This document shows, one piece after another, positions 34,430-61,200 of a DNA stretch of 64,000 nucleotides. The first letter of the stretch is position 1, and every line of letters starts with the position of its first letter. Source of the DNA: Paragordius varius (Eukaryota > Animalia > Nematomorpha); assembly GCA_964247055.1 (NCBI GenBank), contig OZ176056.1, forward strand, positions 4,774,001-4,838,000. Direction: 5' to 3'. A program made the translations under genes and the position numbers. The notes under the pieces are model-generated. The model was not told the DNA's origin, made no database searches, and saw only the letters and a list, made by a program, of their open reading frames with translations.

Positions 34430-36500
34430 AACCTTGGAAATTAAAATGACAAATTATTTCCACTTGTCTCCTTCCCATGCAATATCTTTCAATTCCTTTT
34501 ATACATCTACCAGACTCCTTCTTGACAGTATCATCTTAACATTGGTCTTTATTTTTTTTCTTTACCCTTCAACTTTTCCAAAAATCTAATCCTTCTCAAG
34601 ACATGTACTTTTTAAAATGTGATCAATGTACGTTAACTTTCTTTTTATTATAGCTTCCATTAAGTGACTCCTAATATTTAATTTTTATCTTACTGTTATA
34701 TAATTAGCCTTTTCTGACCATGTAATATTTAATATTTTCCTCACATTTCAAATGCTGCAATCCTTTATTTATCATTCTGTTAACCTTCAACAATAAGATG
34801 CTACCGGAATAACCATGCATTTCATCACTCTTTTTTTGGTTCATAGTGAAATCTATATTTTTCCATAATTTAGTCAAATTGTTTGCAGCTGATTTCCCTA
34901 ATGCTGTGCGGCGTTTAATATCTGGCGTGGAGGAGCCGTTTATATCTACTAAAGAGCTTAATAGAATTTGATTTACTGCATCTCTCGGGTGTCTTCATGG
35001 TTATATTCGGTTTATTTTCTAATAAACTCATAACTTTGGTTTTCTTAAGAATGAGGTTTAATCCATATCTTTTGCTTTCTTCTCTTACTAATCTTATCGT
35101 GTTCTCTAAACTTTCTACATTATCTGCGATCAGCGTAGTGTCATCTGGGAATCTTAGATTGTTAATCATTCTCCCTCCTATCCTCAGGCTTTTAGTAGCT
35201 TCATCTATTTTTCTTATGATCATTTCTCTACAAATATTAAACAAGTATGATGATACGCAACATCCTTGTCTAACACCTTTCTGTATTAAAATTTCGTTGG
35301 TTCTGCTTACCGGGGTTTGTATTAGGGCTTTTTGGCTTTCATACACATTTTTTGAGCAAGGTTTTAAACTTTGCTGTAACTCCCATTCCAAACTTCGCCA
35401 TAAATGGACATGGTTAATCGAGTCAAAAGCTTGGGTATAATCAATACATCATATTAGTAACTTTACTTGAAATTTTTAAAAGTTTCAATTATGCGTTTCA
35501 TGTTAGAGATGCGATCTCTTGTGCTACGCCCCTTCATAAACCTAACATCTGGAATCTCCCTGGCTATCACTTGGTGTAGTCTGTTCTGGATGATCCTTAA
35601 TAAAATTAAATTTTAATTTCATGACTAATGAGAGATATGTTTCTATAGTTCTCGCAATTTGATTTATCTCTCTTTTAAAGACTGGGATAAACAGTAAAGT
35701 TTGCCAGTCTTTTGGCCAACCTGACTCCCATACATCCTGACACAATCTATGTAAAACTGAAATCTGTATATCTCTTTTTAATTCCAAGAAAATATTGTCT
35801 ATTCCCGAGGCTTTCCTTATTGGTATCGTTTAAAGCCTTTATTACCTCTGTTTCAAGTATACATAACTCATCATCCCCATATATATTGTCTATCGTTTGT
35901 ACCTGGGCGTGCAGTATATAGCTGTTTAGTGTAATTTCCCATCTTTAGTTTCTATTTCCGTCGTCAAGATCCTTCCATCATTATCCTTAATTTTAATGTT
36001 TGGAAGTTGGTATTGATTTGTTATTTTTCTGATGGTTTGGAACAGAGGTTTACTTAAGCCTTTTCTGTTTGCTTCCTCAATAGTCATGCATTGTTCGTTC
36101 CAGTACATCGAGGTCCTTCCTTTTCTGTCTTTTGAGTCTTGAATTATTTTTATATCTATTATTCTTCTCTTCGGGCTCTTCTTCTTTCTTCAATTAATTT
36201 TATGCAGTCATCTAATAACCCTTTTTTATATGATGTTTTTTCTTTGGTTAATATTTTTGTGCTGTCTCGTGAATTATTATTTTTATACTATTCCATTGGT
36301 TATCTGAATAATATCTATCTTACCTAGTAATTGATTCTATTGTTTACTTCTATCTTATCTAAAGGAATTCCTTCTACATTGTATTAGTGTTCTTTTTTAT
36401 TCTTCCGGGGTTTTAGCATGTGCCTTTTAATTGTTGTTATTAATATTATCGCTTGAGCAGTCGCAACTTTTCTTGGTTTTAGCATTTATGAAAAATCTTT
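34430..36500 (-). mobile_element. RTE-like non-LTR retrotransposon, degenerate
   Basis: ORF pieces WPKDWQTLLFIPVFK, GVRQGCCVSSYLFN and INNLRFPDDTTLIAD, with frameshifts. Confidence 0.9.
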
Positions 36501-38419: not shown

Positions 38420-39435
38420 CAGTGGCGGAACTATATGTGGGCCCCCCAAGATATAAATATTGCCCCCCCTCCCCCTTCCTCACCAAATTTTCAGTTATCT
38501 TTTGTAGCACATCATTTAGATTCGTAAACAAATATTATATTTAAAAATGATAATAATTACATGACTTGACATCCTGAGTCTAAAAGATTTGCGTTTCTGG
38601 TTTTTTTTTATGATGGTTAGTAACCACCCGCCGCCATTTTTTAAATCCTAACGTTCATTTTCAAAGTTTGAAATAATAACTTATTAAGAGCATGTATTAA
38701 TCAGAAAATCATGTTTTAAAATTTCTCGATTTTGCGTGAGCAAATTTTTTAATTATACCTTTTTATCCATTTGATCCGCCATCTCTGCTTCAATTTCTTG
38801 TAACGATAAAGGCTAAAATTTAATGGATACTGAAAAAAGCATTTTTGCTCTTTCTTCCTTTTACTCAATAATATTAAACAATGAACCCATTTCCTCAAAA
38901 AAATTTAAAATATATAAATTGTCTTTCACACTACTTTAAAAAACAAAATATAATTTTACGCTATATGAATATATTATGCAAATGAGATTTTATTTGCAAA
39001 TATTTTACTTTAACAGAGGCAAAATTACATCTGTCAAAACTATTCTCATAAAATTATAATACTCTAATTTTTAATAACAAAATAATATAGGAAAAATTTA
39101 TAAGAGTCACTTAATTTTTGGTGTCAAGTATCTATACTCATTTATTTATTTTTAACTATTTAAACTTTTTAAGATGTTAACTAGAATAAAGCCGCTTTAA
39201 TATAGTAAAAAAAACATTTTCTACCTTCAAATCAATAATCACTCTCTTTATTCTTTGCCAGTATACTTATTATCAAGCAATCATTACTTACCTATCTGTA
39301 GATAAAAGATAATAAATTTTACCCCCCCCCCCCCGCAAAATAGAAAGGGGCCCCAAATTATAATAAATAAAAAAAGGCTTCTGTTTCTTGTGCCCCCTGC
39401 ACGGTTCCCCCTAGCTCCCTGTAGTTTCACCGCTG
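38420..39435. mobile_element. Non-autonomous hAT/MITE upstream of the LysM gene
   Basis: TIRs CAGTGGCGGAACTA / TAGTTTCACCGCTG (11/14 match). 8-bp TSD GCCTTACA / GCCTTATA. Confidence 0.8.
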
Positions 39436-39869: not shown

Positions 39870-42624
39870 ATGGATTTCGAGCGAACGGCATTTACAGCCG
39901 ATAGGCCAAAGCAATCTTATGGTACTATGCGAAAAACCATTGGCAACATTAATAATTTGCAAAATGGATATATAAACTACAAAGTTATACATGGCGATAC
40001 TTTGCAGGGTATAGCTTTGAAACATGACATTACGGTTAAAAAAAATTTTAATACGATAGATGGCTGAATTAAAGCGTATAAATAGAATTTGGACAAACGA
40101 TGCACTTTTCATTGACAGAGTTCTAAAAATACCAACAAAATACAATTCCAAAACATCTAAACACATTCCTTCAGATTTAATTGGGTATGTATCTTGCCTA
40201 TTTTAATGCTAACGCCAAACATTTGAGAAACATTTATTTAGATGGTGAAATTAAACATATTATATAATTAATTTCATTTTACAAAAATAGTTTATATATA
40301 TGGTAAAAATTGTATATTTATTCTATTACGTCGAATTTGTGATGCCTAAATTTCAATTTAAATTTTCCCTGAGGCGATGCGTTAAATTTACATGCCTTAT
40401 AAAATACTTAGTAGATCTTTGTTTGCTGCCTTGCGAGCACCTTTCTCATTGGGTATAAATTTCTTTATTTTTTATGTATTTTTTACTAAAATATCTTATT
40501 TTTGATAGCTTATTGTCATTAAAAGCATCTATAACAGTGCATCTATATTTTTTTCTTTTCATGATCTTTCAATTCTTTTTTCTTAATGATTGCATCCAAT
40601 TGTTTTTGATATAATTCCGGTTCCCACTAATTTCTCTTGTTTCGGTTTCATATATTTCTTATTTAAATCGGTAGTTATATTACTGAAGGTATTTGCCGAA
40701 AAACTTCGAGGTTTTATTGATTTTCTGGTCCATTCGAGTATTTGTTGCATATCAAATTTACAATATAACCAAATGCATAAACATGAGCCACAAAAATATA
40801 CCGAACACCGAATAAATGTAAATCAGGTAAAGAAATATTAATTAATAAAATAAACCATGTTTTAAAATGAGAATGCCTGGAAAAAACATTTTTTGGACCC
40901 GTGCGAGGTATTGATTTTTGTAAAGATGCCGGTGAAAAAATATATTTTAATTATAATCTCATACATATTTTTATTGTCATTAGATGAAATTGATTCATTA
41001 TTGGTTATATTAATAAAACACTTGTCTGAATTGTTTAATAAGTAATAAATTTATTTAGAAAAAAAAAATGGTTTAAATTTACCAAATACCTAAGTAAAGA
41101 AGTTTCGTTGTCAATTAAAAAACATTTAATATTAAGTAAAACGAGTACAGCGAATACATAAAAATTAAAAAAGAATGTTTATATTAAATATAAAACATCA
41201 AATAAATTGGGATAGGCCAAATTCGAGCAAATATCATGTAAAAACTATTATACAATCGGCCTATGTTTCCAAATTTTTTAGTTATATTTAAATTATATCA
41301 TGTTGCTTTAAATAAATATTTATTTTAGCAAAGTTCCATATATTGTATATTTATGAAAAAAATAAGTTTTTATACTTTAATATTGTAAAAAGATAGCTTA
41401 TTATTTTGACTGCACTTAAGGTGTGCATCATCCATGTTAAACTGGCTAAGTTTTTTTCCAACTGCAAAAAATATATCTGGTATTTTTTTAATCTTTTGTC
41501 AAATAATAATCGTTTAAGAGCATATTTATATTATAAATCTATTAAGATTAATTTGATTTCAACATTGAGCTGATAATAGTTTTATATCAACCAAATGGAG
41601 AAAGGTTTTATAAAAATTCATATTCGAAGAAGAATAGAACATTTTCAAAACATACAATTCCTAATACGTATAATAATTGAACTTTATTTCACATTTTTGA
41701 TTTTGGCAAAAATGAGATATATCTACTTTAGAATTAAAGAGATAAGTTATTTAGATTGCCTTTATACCCAATTTCGGTATTACTAAAAAAATTTCGTATT
41801 ATTATAGCAATAGTTTCTATTTATATATTCATAGATCTTCGCCTTCTACTTCCTTTCAGTCTCCTAATGATATGTATGAAAAATCACAAGTTACATTTTC
41901 TGCAGAATCTCAACAAAATCTGTACTCAAGTTTTGGGCCTGAGCTGAATCGTTTTACCAACAATGCTGAAGCGATATCCACATCATATTATTTCCAACAA
42001 CCATATAACAATAATATTGTAGATAACTTTAATGGTTATAAAACTTTTCCACCTAACAATAATAATGATTTTTGTCCTAGCACCGAGTATAAAAAGTATC
42101 AAACTATTGATACGTCATCCATCTCTAATGCCTCTTTCACAACCAATAATACGACAAGCGATTTAACTGACCTTATATATGATGAAATGGGAAAAAACAG
42201 TATTGTCTGTATTACGCAAAATAATCCAACAAGTAATTCATCTGACACGAATTCAGCCAATTCCGAATTCTATGTTTCGTTTGATGGCCCTGGCAATAGC
42301 AGCCATATGAATGCCGATTCAAACATTGATTTTTCTTTTGAATCGAATCAACCCACATTGAAAGCAATTTCACCTGTTCACCCTTCCTATACACATTTAA
42401 ATCATTTGAGTCCCATGGTTAAAGTCCTAACAGGAACAATAAGGAACGGGGGTAATGAGCAACCACATAAATACGGTTCGTCTAATTCACTCTTGGGGAC
42501 TTTTACAAATTTTTTGCAGACGAGTCGATCAGGCTCTAAAACTAGTCTTAACAGCAACAATGTGAAACAGGCCAATTTCAAGGCAAAAACATCTAAAGCA
42601 CCTTCGGAAATGATTGAGTTATGA
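39870..42624 (+). CDS. LysM domain-containing protein, LYSMD1/2-like (about 359 aa)
   Basis: Exons 39870-40034, 40060-40184 and 41835-42624 total 1080 nt, in frame. The LysM motif is YKVIHGDTLQGIALKHDIT|MAELKRINRIWTNDALFIDRVLKIP, preceded by the family-like SYG motif and followed by an N/S/T-rich tail. Confidence 0.88.
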
Positions 42625-44818: not shown

Positions 44819-47158
44819 ATGGATGCGTTTGAAATCGACCAGGATGATTTAGAGTTTGCTTTAAATCCTCATTCAAGGCGAAGGAAATTAACCAAAGAAC
44901 AGCAATTATATGGTAACATGTTTTTAATTAAAATAAAATAATTTTTTATTTACTTTTCTTTTAATAAATAGGAATTTGGGCCGATGAAGATGAAACAGAA
45001 AATGAGAAACAGTATTTTGGATCCTCTGTTAAAGCTAAACGGAATTTCGCAGCTAAATCTGTAACTGATCCTATAGGCTTTGTTAGCGGAGGGTTAGCGA
45101 AACCGGCAGATGAATTAGACGAGGATAAGGTTATACTTAACAAAAATAAAGGAAGAACTTAAATATATTTTCACTAAAAACCCTAAATAAAAATGATAAA
45201 TACTGAATTTTAATCACTCGACGGTAATTCAAATAATGCCTATTTTCAAAGTTGTAATTATAAAAAAGTATATTTTTTTAAAAAAATTGTTTAGTATATG
45301 CATTTTATGTGTATAAATTATATTTTTGCATAATTTAGGAATCTGAAAATATTCCATTTAGTGATGACGAATATGAAGCCAACGAGCAATTCGAAACGAC
45401 TTTGTCACAAAAAGCTCGGAATGACTTTCAAAGCAACAAACAGCCAAAAAAGTTTGTCAATTTTTATGAACGTGAGGAAACAGAACAAAGGTTTTTTTCT
45501 TTTAATAAATAAGAATGAGTATTGAAAAATTCAAAAGTTTTATAGGTCCCTTTCTAACTTTAAACATTTAACATTGAGTAATTTTATTATGTATTAATCT
45601 GCATTTGGGAATTAATTTATTTTTAAAGGAATTTGCTGTAATTTTTAACAATGATATTTTATATAATTCAAAATATTAATATCATACTAATATATGATAA
45701 AGCTCAAATATTGTAGATATGTCAAATGTGCCAAAATATTGTATTATGCAAAATTAACTTTCAACCAAAAAATAAACTTTATTAAAAATTTATTATAAAT
45801 GATTTATTATATATGCAATTATAATTCAGCTAAAATTATATAAATTTATTATAATATTTCAATTACTACAAGTAATCTTTGTCAAACGTAAATAAATTAT
45901 TTATTTTTTATATATGATGTAATATAGTTAATGAAGGCATTTTTGTTTCCCAAATTTGGAACATGTATATATACATTTATATAGCACAAAAATTGGTGAT
46001 TGGGAAAGACATACCAAAGGTATAGGTCAAAAGCTTTTGTTACAAGTATTATTCTTGATTGCTTATTAATTTTGACGATTAATTTATTTAAACATAAAAA
46101 AAATTTCTTTAAATAATGTAACCTTCGGTATATCTTATAAATCACCTGATTTACATATATCGGTTCATCATTTATTTCTTCATTTATTTATGTGAACAGA
46201 TGGGCTACCAAAGTGGCAAGGGTCTGGGTAAACACGGTCAGGGTCAAACTCAACCCGTGTTAGCGGTTAAAAGGAAGGGAAAAGGTGCCATAGGTGCTTA
46301 TGGACCAGAAATCCCTGCATCAGCTGTTAACGATGAGCAAACGGAGCATGCATTCACTCGCTCAGATGGGAAAACAACAGCTGTCCAAGCAAAAAAAGGC
46401 AGAAATTGGAGAAAAGGACATGATGATGATGCGAAAGAACTTACAATAGATGATGTATATTTTTAACATATTTGATTAAAACACTCTAACTTTTTATAAA
46501 TTTTACTATTTTAATGATTGGATTATATAATAATGTTTTGTGAAGAGAAAGAGAAGTCTCTATCTTGCTTTTTTTGAGGAAAAATTAGTTCTTTTTTGGC
46601 TAACATTAATGTTAAATGGCTTATTATAATTTTTTTTATTAATTTTTACTTTTTTTGGTAATTCATGCATTTAGGCAAATATTTCGAAATTGATATAAAT
46701 TTAATCTGGTCAAAGGTAAAATAGCTTTAAACTTTAATTTTTTAATTCCGTTTAATCTAAAAATTTACATGTTTTAAACTATACATTTTTGAGAGTCAAT
46801 TTGAATTATATTTTATGTTATAATAAATTTTTTACAAAACCAAAACCTTTTTTTTCATAAAGCACCGTATATTTAATCAGGATATTATATATGTTAGAAC
46901 GATAACAGAGTAGCAATGAGTCAAGATGACGAAAATTTACCACTAACAAACCTACTTCCCTTTTGGGCTGCCTCTGGAAGCAAATCAAGCAGCCAGTTAA
47001 AAAATGAACAAATGCATAATGTTAAAGTTATCGATATGACGGGAAAAGAGACTAAAATTTTGACGGGTATCATATTTAATTAGTTTTAAAAAATGTTTTG
47101 CAGTAAAATGAAACAGTTAAAACCTAATTTTGTTAAAAAGTAATATTTTTAAACCTTG

Positions 47159-58209: not shown

Positions 58210-61200
58210 ATGGATCCCAAAAACGTTGAGAATGATAATAAAATTTTGATGGAAAACTTCCATGAAATTCCACTAAGCGAAAACCATGGTTCAAATATTC
58301 AAATTAATCCACTTGCCACACTTGGCAACACTGGGCAACCGTTGTCCAATGATACAAATCCCAAAGAACGAATTAGAATTGATGCGATAGTTCCGTCAGA
58401 ACATAAAAGTGCCCTTGGAAAACTTATCCTTAGTTCACTGTCTACCAGCCTTAACGTGGCCAATAAATGTATGTCCCATTCAATCCAACGCGTCGAAAAA
58501 AATTTGAAGCATCGGGTAAGAGACGCTAAAAGTTATGAACACATTTCACGGCCCAAAAAATGGTGGGAATTCGTCCTTTTATTTTCCATACTCATAGGGG
58601 TCGAATTTATACACGCGGTTGAGGCCATTTTCGTTAACCCCATACTTCTTGCCATAGGTATACCGGCTACGTTTGCAAGTATGATATGGAGTCTTAGCCC
58701 AGTCCTCGGTTTAATAACTGTCCCTATTTTAGGCTCCCTGAGTGACAAATGTAGCAGTAAATGGGGCCGAAGACGGCCTTTCATTTTTTTCTTTACTATG
58801 GGCATGATAATCGGATTAATACTGATTGGATTTGGACCAAATTTTAGCGTTAAACTAGGGGATGCTGAACTTAAGGAAGCCAAAAATTCACATGCTGTCA
58901 TGACATCACCAACAACTAACACATCAAGTGAATATCCCTTCCACGTAGGCATAGACACTGAAGCAAAACGTACTCAGCCCCATCCCTTATCATATAAATA
59001 CTTGTTAATTTTTATTTGCGCTGGGGTAGTTATCATGGATTATTCTGCCGACTCTGGCTCTTCCCCAGCTCTCAGCTACATGTTAGACATTACACTTTCC
59101 GAACAACATACGCTCGGTCTCACAATAGGTACTGCTATGACGGGAACTGGTGGTTTACTGGGTTATCTGGTAGGTGCTTTAGATTGGGAATCCTATTGGC
59201 ACAGTCCAGTGCTTCGAAATCAGTTCCAAATTGTTTTCATGATAGCTTTAGCACTTTTGATCGTGACGGCAACAATAACGCTAACGAGTTTTCGTGAGAT
59301 GCCACTTTACCACGTTAACGTAGATAAAGCTGAATATGCTAGTCGAATGGCACGAAGCAAATCTCTCTTATATGCCAGCGATCGAAGTATAAAACGAAAA
59401 TATAGTGTACGCACTCGTCCTTATGCTCATTCCATAAGCTATCTTCCTTCACCTCCGCTCTTTGGAGATATGAGCGATCTCAAAGGAGCCAAATTACCTA
59501 AAGGATATCGTGCAAGCTTACCCAACATCTCTTCAAAGAAAAAAAGTTTTTTCGACCGAAAAGCACCACGAATATCCATTTTTAGGAAGAAACCCGCCTC
59601 TCAAGTTAATCCAATCCTTCCTAATGGAAATGTATTACCACATGAAACACCATCTAAAGCAGTTCCTTTAACTCCCATCGTTATACGCATTCAAGATGAA
59701 GATGGAAAAAGCTTGGCACCTATCACTGAATTCGGAGAAAATTTGGATCATCCTATAGGAAACCAGTCACAGAATACCTTTCCAAGCAATGAAAGACCAG
59801 GAATACGGAAAAAATCACCTAAAAGTAGTAAAGATTCTTCGAGATCCAACAGTCCCAACCCTCGTCATAGGTATAAAACGTCATTTAGTTCTGTAATTTC
59901 ACACACAAAATTCCAGGATCTCATACTTGATAAGGGGATAAATCATTCCAGATTATCCATAACCGGTGGTACCAATCCATTAAGTGATACAAGTCGCAAA
60001 TCATCATTATCATCCCGTATTTCAGCAGATACCCCCAAGTAAATATATTCAATCACATTAATAAAACAAAAATTATAATCGTAACGATTTGGTTTAGATT
60101 GCAATATTTTTATCAAAATATGATTAGATCAAAGGATGACATGATGATCGGGTCGTCTTTGGACAAAAAGCAAACCCCATACACCAATCCTTTAACACTT
60201 AGTGGAGTAGATAGTGGTGAGTTAGCAATGGGTCCAGTTTTAAAAGAATTATCTAAAACCGATGGACAAAGTATGTTAACTTTAAAATAATCTATACAAT
60301 AAACAATACTTTTTAATTATCTCTGATACAATGTGTCAAAGTTAGTACGACTTGTGAAGAAAGTAATAAGCATCCTAATTAGGCTCAAAAGACATATAAG
60401 AAAATAAATAAATTCTATATACTCTTAATTGAATTTTTTTGCCATTATACCTATCTATTATTAAAAGTATATAAAAATAGACATTTCATGCCTTAAAAGT
60501 AGCCTAATTAGTTATAATCAGCTGTTAGGCATATTTTTGACTACTTCTGTTAATGGCTTTTAAGACACCAAAATTTATTTCGTCTATGGTATTATTCACT
60601 CTCTCTCTTTAAATCTCCCAAAACTCACAAACGAATTCCAAAATACTCTATGGATTTATATATATTATCTATTATACATTAAATAGATTTACAACAAATT
60701 TCTCCCATCCTATTAAACAACGTACCAGCATCAATTGAATCAAGGGAGTCACAACCTAACAGTCCTTCCCTTACAACTACGACTACAGATGAAGAAGATG
60801 ATATGAGCCTCAAGGAATACCTCATATCGATCGTTAAGATGCCTAGAATCTTGGCTTTTTTGTGTGCTACACATCTGTTTTGTTGGATGGCTTTTCTATG
60901 TTTCGCAACTTACTTCTCTGACTTCGTGGGCCAAAGCGTGTTTCGGGGAAGCCCAACTGCAAACCCTGGAACACCTGAGAATCTTTTGTATGAAGCGGGT
61001 GTTCGGTTTTCGTGTGTCGGCATGTTCGTATACGCTACAACATGTATACTATATTCGACACGCATAAAACCGTTTGCCTTGAGAATTGGTATAAAGCTTA
61101 CGATACATATATAATGTGCACATTTATGCCGTTTAATATTGTAGGCCAATTTGAAATACAGTAGCGTATGTTAGATAACAAATTTTGTCCATTAACAACG

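What the first reader, a model, noticed from the sequence alone, without database searches (positions are those of the whole stretch)
40035..40059. Apparently obligatory 25-nt GT-AG intron splitting a LysM domain
Seen: GTTAAAAAAAATTTTAATACGATAG (25 nt) sits exactly between ...LKHDIT and MAELKRINRIW.... Removing it restores a textbook LysM domain and an in-frame 1080-nt CDS. Retaining it shifts the frame. The alternative upstream donor (40009) would delete conserved residues and hit a stop. Adding or removing A's in the homopolymer cannot rescue read-through, because the intron's terminal TAG falls in frame. Established: animal introns under about 30 nt are rare, apart from a few reduced lineages. 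Other short introns here are about 59-60 nt. Inference: this lineage's spliceosome handles ultra-short introns alongside kb-size ones.
Basis: partly seen in the sequence, partly recalled or inferred. Interest (0 to 1): 0.75.

Follow-up and report, generated by a model that had tools for sequence, protein, structure and literature searches.

The report
25-base intron in hairworm LysM gene
A 25-base GT...AG stretch that splits a conserved LysM domain is very probably a real, obligatory intron, one of many 21-31-base introns in this hairworm-like genome, a size published for only two other animal groups; no RNA data could be reached to show the cut.

Summary
The 25 bases at 40035-40059 begin with GT and end with AG. 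They sit between LysM profile positions 19 and 20 with no residue missing. Reading through them hits a stop, and the terminal TAG is in frame with the next exon, so a homopolymer miscount cannot rescue the frame.

I then tested whether this intron is a one-off. In the same 110.6-Mb genome I found 27 more exact-fit GT...AG introns of 21-31 bases (median 24). They lie in 13 other conserved genes: the second LysM gene, four CCT chaperonin genes and eight small-GTPase genes. The shared signals are:
- G|GTWT at the 5' end
- T-x-TAG at the 3' end
- an A at +16/+17 from the 5' end in 25 of 28

The LysM intron fits these. U1 and U2 snRNAs are canonical. The nearest relative found is the horsehair worm Gordionus (48% identity on a neighbouring gene).

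The best reading is an ordinary U2-type intron of extreme shortness, lying beside a 1,650-base intron in the same gene.

This scan had already noted the class at least nine times elsewhere in this genome, but not this intron. The held literature names only myxobolid myxozoans and Dicyema for animal introns under 30 bases.

The parts
39870..40034 (+). Coding exon 1 of a LYSMD1/2-like gene: start codon, N-terminal region and the first half of the LysM domain (profile positions 1-19)
   Evidence: Translation. Pfam LysM positions 1-19 match residues 37-55, E 4.4e-4.
40035..40059 (+). 25-nt GT...AG intron in phase 0, with an A8 run, TTTTAAT with A at +16/+17, and a TAG 3' end
   Evidence: It fits the class consensus derived.
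40060..40184 (+). Coding exon 2: second half of the LysM domain (profile positions 20-43) plus a linker. It ends in phase 2 before the donor GTATGT.
   Evidence: Translation. Pfam LysM positions 20-43 match from residue 1. It aligns to human 2DJP residues 37-62.
40185..41834 (+). Intron 2, 1,650 nt (GTATGT...CATAG). An alternative in-frame pair, donor at 40189 and acceptor ending at 41859, cannot be excluded without RNA.
   Evidence: Frames worked out. No long ORF lies in between.
41835..42624 (+). Last coding exon: 263 codons, low-complexity and rich in S/T/N, ending in stop TGA at 42622-42624
   Evidence: Open frame. No Pfam family and no relatives by word search. A 263-codon open frame in 27% GC DNA is about 1e-10 by chance (my estimate).

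Best explanation
The 25 bases are a genuine, constitutive U2-type (GT-AG) spliceosomal intron in phase 0. It is the first intron of a LYSMD1/2-like gene of a hairworm-related animal. It must be removed to make the protein: removal joins ...LKHDIT to MAELKRINRIW... and rebuilds one intact LysM domain. It belongs to a genome-wide class of 21-31-nt introns. Members of the class are recognised by a minimal 5' signal (G|GTW), a T-x-TAG 3' end and, by inference, a branch adenosine about 16-17 nt from the 5' splice site (here the AA in TTTTAATA, 8-9 nt before the 3' end). What is shown: the exact fit, the boundaries, the class, the canonical U1 and U2. What is inferred: the actual excision, the branch site, and definition of these introns across the intron.
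For: 1. Exact fit. LysM profile positions 19|20 abut the segment with no residue lost. The human LysM structure 2DJP is continuous across the junction from its residue 37.
2. GT and AG lie exactly at the only boundaries that keep the conserved residues. Read-through stops.
3. The rest of the gene is intact, with a 263-codon last exon, and the locus is single copy in the genome.
4. There are 27 more exact-fit GT...AG introns of 21-31 nt in 13 other conserved genes: the second LysM gene, CCT subunits, and Rab, Rho and Ral GTPases (table). All 28 are GT-AG.
5. Shared signals: exon -1 is G in 21/28, -3 is T in 24/28, and A at +16 and at +17 in 18/28 each (p 0.0026 each, uncorrected). 25/28 have an A at one of the two positions. 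The LysM intron has exon -1 G, A16, A17 and TAG.
6. U1 keeps ACUUACCUG and U2 keeps GUAGUA.
Against: No transcript, junction read or orthologue gene structure could be obtained. Each LysM half alone scores just under the Pfam cut-off (20.6 and 17.4 bits against 20.9). This intron has +4 A (6/28 in the class), is the only one of the 28 with G at -5, and has almost no pyrimidine tract. The A at +16/+17 is significant only before correction for the roughly 20 positions examined. My set of 28 was curated by eye against conserved motifs and is not an unbiased sample.
Confidence: 0.9

Rival explanations
1. The 25 bases are a recent insertion in a dying gene (pseudogene), or an assembly or polishing artefact such as a collapsed longer intron, and nothing removes them.
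For: No RNA evidence was obtained. The segment contains an A8 homopolymer. No relatives were found for the last exon.
Against: A random insert would carry GT and AG exactly at the frame-restoring boundaries about 0.2% of the time. Both LysM halves and a 263-codon downstream frame are intact. 27 other conserved genes-worth of sites, including essential CCT subunits, show the same 21-31-nt GT-AG interruptions with shared signals, and errors or decay would not produce that. Homopolymer errors change 1-2 nt, not 25, and the in-frame TAG rules out rescue.
Confidence: 0.04
2. The segment is removed, or skipped, by a mechanism other than the spliceosome: IRE1/RtcB-type cytoplasmic splicing as for the 23-26-nt XBP1 intron, ribosomal bypassing, or excision at the DNA level.
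For: The size resembles the XBP1 intron (my knowledge). The segment with its flanks folds better than shuffles, z -2.65.
Against: The boundaries are GT/AG, not the paired CNGNNGN loops of IRE1 sites. The predicted fold is one A-run/T-run hairpin, not twin stem-loops. The class as a whole shows no structure signal (mean z 0.13). A bypass from take-off codon ACG to the internal ACG would land out of frame. No terminal direct repeats are present. 28 of 28 class members being GT-AG fits the spliceosome.
Confidence: 0.02
3. It is a true intron, but it is removed inefficiently or conditionally, so that retention (premature stop, likely mRNA decay) regulates the gene rather than being mere noise.
For: The signals are weak: no pyrimidine tract, +4 A, and the 5' splice site and putative branch lie inside a predicted hairpin.
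Against: Nothing specific points to regulation. The same kind of intron sits in housekeeping genes. Structure is not a feature of the class.
Confidence: 0.04

Closest known systems
Ultra-short introns of myxobolid myxozoans (Henneguya, Thelohanellus, Myxobolus) and the dicyemid Dicyema japonicum (PMC13644364)
   Same: These are animal GT-AG introns under 30 nt (medians 22-27 bp). They have a reduced 5' signal (GTa) and A residues whose distance from the 3' AG grows with intron length, which means they are fixed relative to the 5' end. The U2 machinery is canonical and the hosts are parasites.
   Different: In those lineages the whole intron population is shortened in compact genomes. Here tiny introns lie beside introns of 53-70 nt, hundreds of nt and kilobases, in a 110-Mb repeat-bearing genome. 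The 3' end keeps T at -3 and -5 (T-x-TAG) rather than AG alone. The lineage is a different phylum (closest relative found: Gordionus).
Ciliate tiny introns (Paramecium about 25 nt, Stentor 15-16 nt; PMC5014332, and cited in PMC13644364)
   Same: Same size range, AT-rich, GT-AG, removed by a conventional spliceosome.
   Different: Those are unicellular lineages in which essentially all introns are tiny. Paramecium shows a deficit of stop-free 3n introns (my knowledge), whereas 9 of 28 here are 3n and four of those have no in-frame stop.
LYSMD1/LYSMD2, the cytoplasmic single-LysM proteins of animals
   Same: An N-terminal region followed by one LysM domain and a low-complexity tail. Piece B aligns to the human LysM structure 2DJP, labelled SB145.
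   Different: The tail has no detectable relatives. Orthology to LYSMD1 versus LYSMD2 was not resolved. Whether other animals have an intron at this codon was not tested.

Membership tests
U2-type GT-AG spliceosomal intron | GT at the 5' end and AG at the 3' end, at the boundaries that restore the reading frame | tested here: met
   It is the only canonical pair that keeps ...DIT|MAE....
U2-type GT-AG spliceosomal intron | Removal restores a conserved protein with no residue lost or gained | tested here: met
   LysM profile positions 1-19 and 20-43 abut the segment. 2DJP residues 37-62 align from residue 1 of the next exon.
U2-type GT-AG spliceosomal intron | Branch-point adenosine in a yUnAy-like context upstream of the 3' splice site | tested here: inconclusive
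   TTTTAAT has A at +16/+17. A at these positions occurs in 18/28 class members each, p 0.0026 uncorrected. No lariat data.
U2-type GT-AG spliceosomal intron | Polypyrimidine tract before the AG | tested here: not met
   The 3' end reads ACGATAG. The class keeps only T at -3 and -5. Published ultra-short introns also lack a tract.
U2-type GT-AG spliceosomal intron | Excision seen in RNA | not testable with these tools
U2-type GT-AG spliceosomal intron | Canonical U1 and U2 snRNAs present in the genome | tested here: met
   U1 at 124 bits with ACUUACCUG, U2 at 178 bits with GUGUAGUA.
Animal ultra-short intron lineages as defined in PMC13644364 | Introns under 30 bp at conserved sites between conserved exons | tested here: met
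   27 of the 28 curated introns are 21-29 nt and one is 31 nt. They lie in 14 conserved genes.
Animal ultra-short intron lineages as defined in PMC13644364 | Genome-wide shortening (median intron 22-27 bp) | tested here: not met
   The same gene has a 1,650-nt intron. CCT genes have mostly 300-700-nt introns. A second size class lies at 53-70 nt.
LysM domain protein (Pfam PF01476), LYSMD1/2-like | LysM domain above the Pfam gathering score | tested here: inconclusive
   The halves score 20.6 and 17.4 bits against a cut-off of 20.9. The genome scan gives 21.1 bits for the first half. The joined domain was not scored, because the joined step was left out by rule.
IRE1/XBP1-type unconventional intron | Two stem-loops with CNGNNGN loops at the cleavage sites | tested here: not met
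   The junctions read TTACG|GTTAA and GATAG|ATGGC. The predicted fold is a single hairpin.
Programmed translational bypass | Matching take-off and landing codons that restore the frame | tested here: not met
   Take-off codon ACG and the internal ACG at 40053-40055 would resume out of frame and hit TGA (read).

The most novel reading that the evidence does not exclude
Horsehair worms, or a close relative, are a third independent animal lineage with spliceosomal introns under 30 nt. Unlike myxobolids and dicyemids, they keep them as a distinct size class (21-31 nt) beside 50-70-nt and kb-long introns in a genome that is not compact. The branch adenosine would be measured about 16-17 nt from the 5' splice site. 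That would mean extreme intron shortness does not need genome-wide compaction, and that one canonical spliceosome runs two very different geometries in the same transcript.
Probability: 0.8. Interest if true: 0.75.

Novelty: new variant of a known kind. Interest (0 to 1): 0.68.

Why it matters
Introns under about 30 nt were long held to be absent from animals. A September 2026 paper (PMC13644364) accepts them in only two parasitic, genome-compacted lineages. This case adds an ecdysozoan lineage in which tiny and very long introns share single genes, so it separates intron miniaturisation from genome streamlining. It offers a natural system for asking how a canonical spliceosome fits a 21-25-nt intron. 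There is also a practical consequence: standard gene finders set minimum intron lengths above 30 nt, so they would break or mis-frame many genes of this genome. That could contribute to the low BUSCO scores and the apparent gene losses reported for hairworms (71.6% in the Gordionus report).

Tried and rejected
1. Word searches with the last exon and with exon 1 found no relatives. The length filter excludes full-length LYSMD proteins for such short pieces.
The Gordionus locus, the orthologue intron positions and any transcript contigs could therefore not be fetched.
3. A reference-free scan of the window for GT...AG segments joining two open frames of at least 30 codons was far too noisy in 27% GC DNA, giving hundreds of hits. 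I abandoned it.
4. An automatic junction finder between neighbouring Pfam pieces was misled by hits that read through 3n stop-free introns. I curated the junctions by eye from three-frame printouts instead.
5. The third LysM hit, on contig C6, is a false positive inside a P-type ATPase.
6. There is no RNA-structure signal in the class.
7. I did not run the big protein search. The domain family is not in doubt, a 42-55-aa query has little power against 1.8 billion proteins, and its output has no gene structures.
Exons were searched by reference one at a time. In scripts, joins were used only to test frame continuity.
9. Literature searches found no report of introns under 30 nt in Nematomorpha. 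The 2023 hairworm genome paper in Current Biology is not in the held library, so I could not check it.

Full report
**Observation**

The window is AT-rich, about 27% GC. It is G000:C7:4774001-4838000 of a 110.6-Mb assembly in 44 contigs. At 40035-40059 the sequence reads GTTAAAAAAAATTTTAATACGATAG, and this is unique in the window.

- The frame opened by ATG 39870 runs to ...YKVIHGDTLQGIALKHDIT at 40034.
- The frame from 40060 reads MAELKRINRIWTNDALFIDRVLKIP....
- Pfam LysM matches profile positions 1-19 up to the very last residue of the first piece, and positions 20-43 from the very first residue of the second.
- The human LysM structure 2DJP aligns from its residue 37 to residue 1 of the second piece.

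The 25 bases are therefore intercalated exactly, with no residue lost.

- Read-through ends in a stop after 10 extra codons.
- The terminal TAG is in frame with the next exon, so no miscount of the A-run could open the frame.
- The alternative donor at 40009 leads to GAT GGC TGA.
A second in-frame donor/acceptor pair (40189/41859) cannot be excluded without RNA.

All parts of the observation are confirmed.

**What organism**

The long single-exon SLC45-like transporter ORF at 58210-60042 has its best match in "Gordionus sp. m RMFG-2023": 48% identity, E 2.6e-143. The next hits are insects at 34%. The published Gordionus montsenyensis genome has 26.9% GC. A hairworm relative, as earlier notes of this scan proposed, is supported. 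The species is not identified.

**Is it a one-off?**

The genome holds one other real LysM gene, at C2:9685262-9685378 on the minus strand. Its domain is also split:
- by a 24-nt GT...AG segment between ...SYI and VKNNDT...
- by a 60-nt intron after ...FPGQ

I then scanned the genome with the CCT/TCP-1 profile and the Ras profile, and read the DNA where neighbouring exon matches abut.

In CCT genes the tiny introns found lie near the 5' end, and the other gaps between exon matches are mostly 300-700 nt:

| Gene (locus) | Flanking conserved residues | Intron sizes |
|---|---|---|
| CCT (L006) | around ...AVADSIRTSLGPRGMDKM | 25 and 26 nt |
| CCT (L007) | not recorded | 24 nt |
| CCT3-like (L010) | LGPRAMLK\|MLMDP | 28 nt |
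| CCT8-like (L009) | GPNG\|MNK | 29 nt |

In small GTPase genes they occur throughout the gene:

| Gene (locus) | Intron sizes |
|---|---|
| Rab11-like (L012) | 25, 24, 25 nt |
| Rho-like (L013) | 23, 24 nt |
| Rab1-like (L014) | 23, 22, 26 nt |
| Rab8-like (L016) | 27, 29, 28, 23 nt |
| Rab18-like (L017) | 21, 21, 22, 22, 22 nt |
| Ral-like (L024) | 21, 24 nt |
| Two further Rabs (L019, L015) | 23 and 31 nt |

Gene names rest on my reading of very conserved motifs, not on a database call.

Together with the LysM intron this makes 28 introns of 21-31 nt (median 24) in 14 genes, and every one is GT...AG. The next sizes seen are 36 nt, then 53-70 nt, then hundreds of bases to kilobases.

**Signals**

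Aligned at the 5' end, the set gives these counts:

| Position | Count |
|---|---|
| exon -1 G | 21/28 |
| +3 A/T | 18/10 |
| +4 T | 20/28 |
| +5 G | 5/28 |
| -3 T | 24/28 |
| -5 T | 23/28 |

- A occurs at +16 and at +17 in 18/28 each, against an interior A frequency of 0.365. That is p 0.0026 each, uncorrected for about 20 positions. 25/28 have an A at one of the two positions.
- PMC13644364 reports the same geometry for myxobolids and Dicyema: conserved A residues that move away from the AG as the intron lengthens. I take it as a hint of a branch site measured from the 5' splice site.
- The LysM intron has exon -1 G, A16, A17 and TAG. It is atypical at +4 (A) and at -5 (G).
- Nine of the 28 are multiples of three, and four of those have no in-frame stop. 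I see no sign of selection against 3n introns in this small sample.
- There is no RNA-structure signal in the class (mean z 0.13). The hairpin predicted around the LysM intron (z -2.65) looks like a by-product of its A-run and T-run.
- U1 (5' ACUUACCUG) and U2 (GUGUAGUA) are canonical.

**Explanation**

The segment is a constitutive U2-type intron of extreme shortness, and a typical member of a genome-wide class. The protein cannot be made unless it is removed.

- Shown: the exact fit, the boundaries, the integrity of the rest of the gene, single-copy status, the class and its shared signals, and conventional snRNAs.
- Inferred: that splicing occurs, the branch site, and definition across the intron.

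The rivals, each unlikely:
- Pseudogene or assembly artefact. The GT-AG ends would arise by chance about 0.2% of the time, and essential CCT genes carry the same kind of interruption.
- IRE1-type splicing, ribosomal bypass or DNA excision. The defining features were tested and not met.
- Regulated retention. It remains possible as a refinement, but nothing points to it.

**Comparison with what is known**

The held literature accepts animal introns under 30 nt only in Myxobolidae and Dicyema japonicum, both with genome-wide shortening (PMC13644364). Ciliates are the classical case outside animals (PMC5014332). I found no report for Nematomorpha. The 2023 Current Biology hairworm genome paper is not in the library, so I could not check it. 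The difference here is that a discrete tiny class coexists with long introns in the same genes.

**Limits**

- No RNA evidence was obtained.
The orthologue intron position and transcript contigs could not be examined.
- The two exon word searches were blank.
- The spliced CDS was never sent to a search tool.
- The big protein search was not used.
- My set of 28 is hand-curated from three protein families. It is not a genome-wide census.

**Earlier notes of this scan**

The scan had already flagged the same class at least nine times elsewhere in this genome. One note claims RNA support for a neighbouring gene. Another claims longer introns at the same codons in a related hairworm. I could test neither. 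The present intron had not been reported.

Noticed in passing
L002:1450-1641 (minus strand) = G000:C2, about 9685211-9685402: The genome's second LysM gene looks OXR1/NCOA7-like to me, though I did not test that. Its LysM domain is split by a 24-nt GT-AG intron after ...SYI and by a 60-nt intron after ...FPGQ. Both positions differ from that of the LYSMD intron.
   Followed up: partly
L012 (Rab11-like), L013 (Rho-like), L016 (Rab8-like), L024 (Ral-like): Four tiny introns of 24, 24, 27 and 24 nt are multiples of three with no in-frame stop. Retaining them would add 8-9 residues inside the GTPase fold without breaking the frame. Six-frame searches read straight through them.
   Followed up: partly
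G000 contig ends: C8:6857-7044, C6:8570-8760, C4:7260-7460, C1:15223126-15223320, C6:10107039-10107216: U2 snRNA copies lie about 6.6-8.6 kb from at least five contig ends, which suggests a shared subtelomeric unit carrying U2. Large U2 arrays also lie at C3:257-527 kb, and a U1 cluster at C6:565-633 kb.
   Followed up: no
window 58210-60042 (+): A 610-codon single-exon SLC45-like MFS transporter ORF lies in a locally GC-richer stretch (38.5% against about 27%). It is 48% identical to a 1,024-aa Gordionus protein.
   Followed up: partly
window 34915-35391 (-): A reverse-transcriptase fragment (RVT_1, E 1e-13), so a retroelement remnant lies about 4.5 kb upstream of the LysM gene.
   Followed up: no
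window 46200-46466 (+): This exon encodes G-patch profile positions 12-44. The first 11 positions must lie on an upstream exon. It is part of the gene at about 44.9-54.8 kb that another note of this scan discusses.
   Followed up: no
window 39322-39334: A run of 13 C about 540 nt upstream of the start codon, inside a short GC-richer patch. Not explained.
   Followed up: no
window 40010-40085 (+): The 25-nt intron with its exon flanks is predicted to fold into one hairpin that buries the 5' splice site and the putative branch site (-12.4 kcal/mol, z -2.65). The other 27 tiny introns do not share this.
   Followed up: yes
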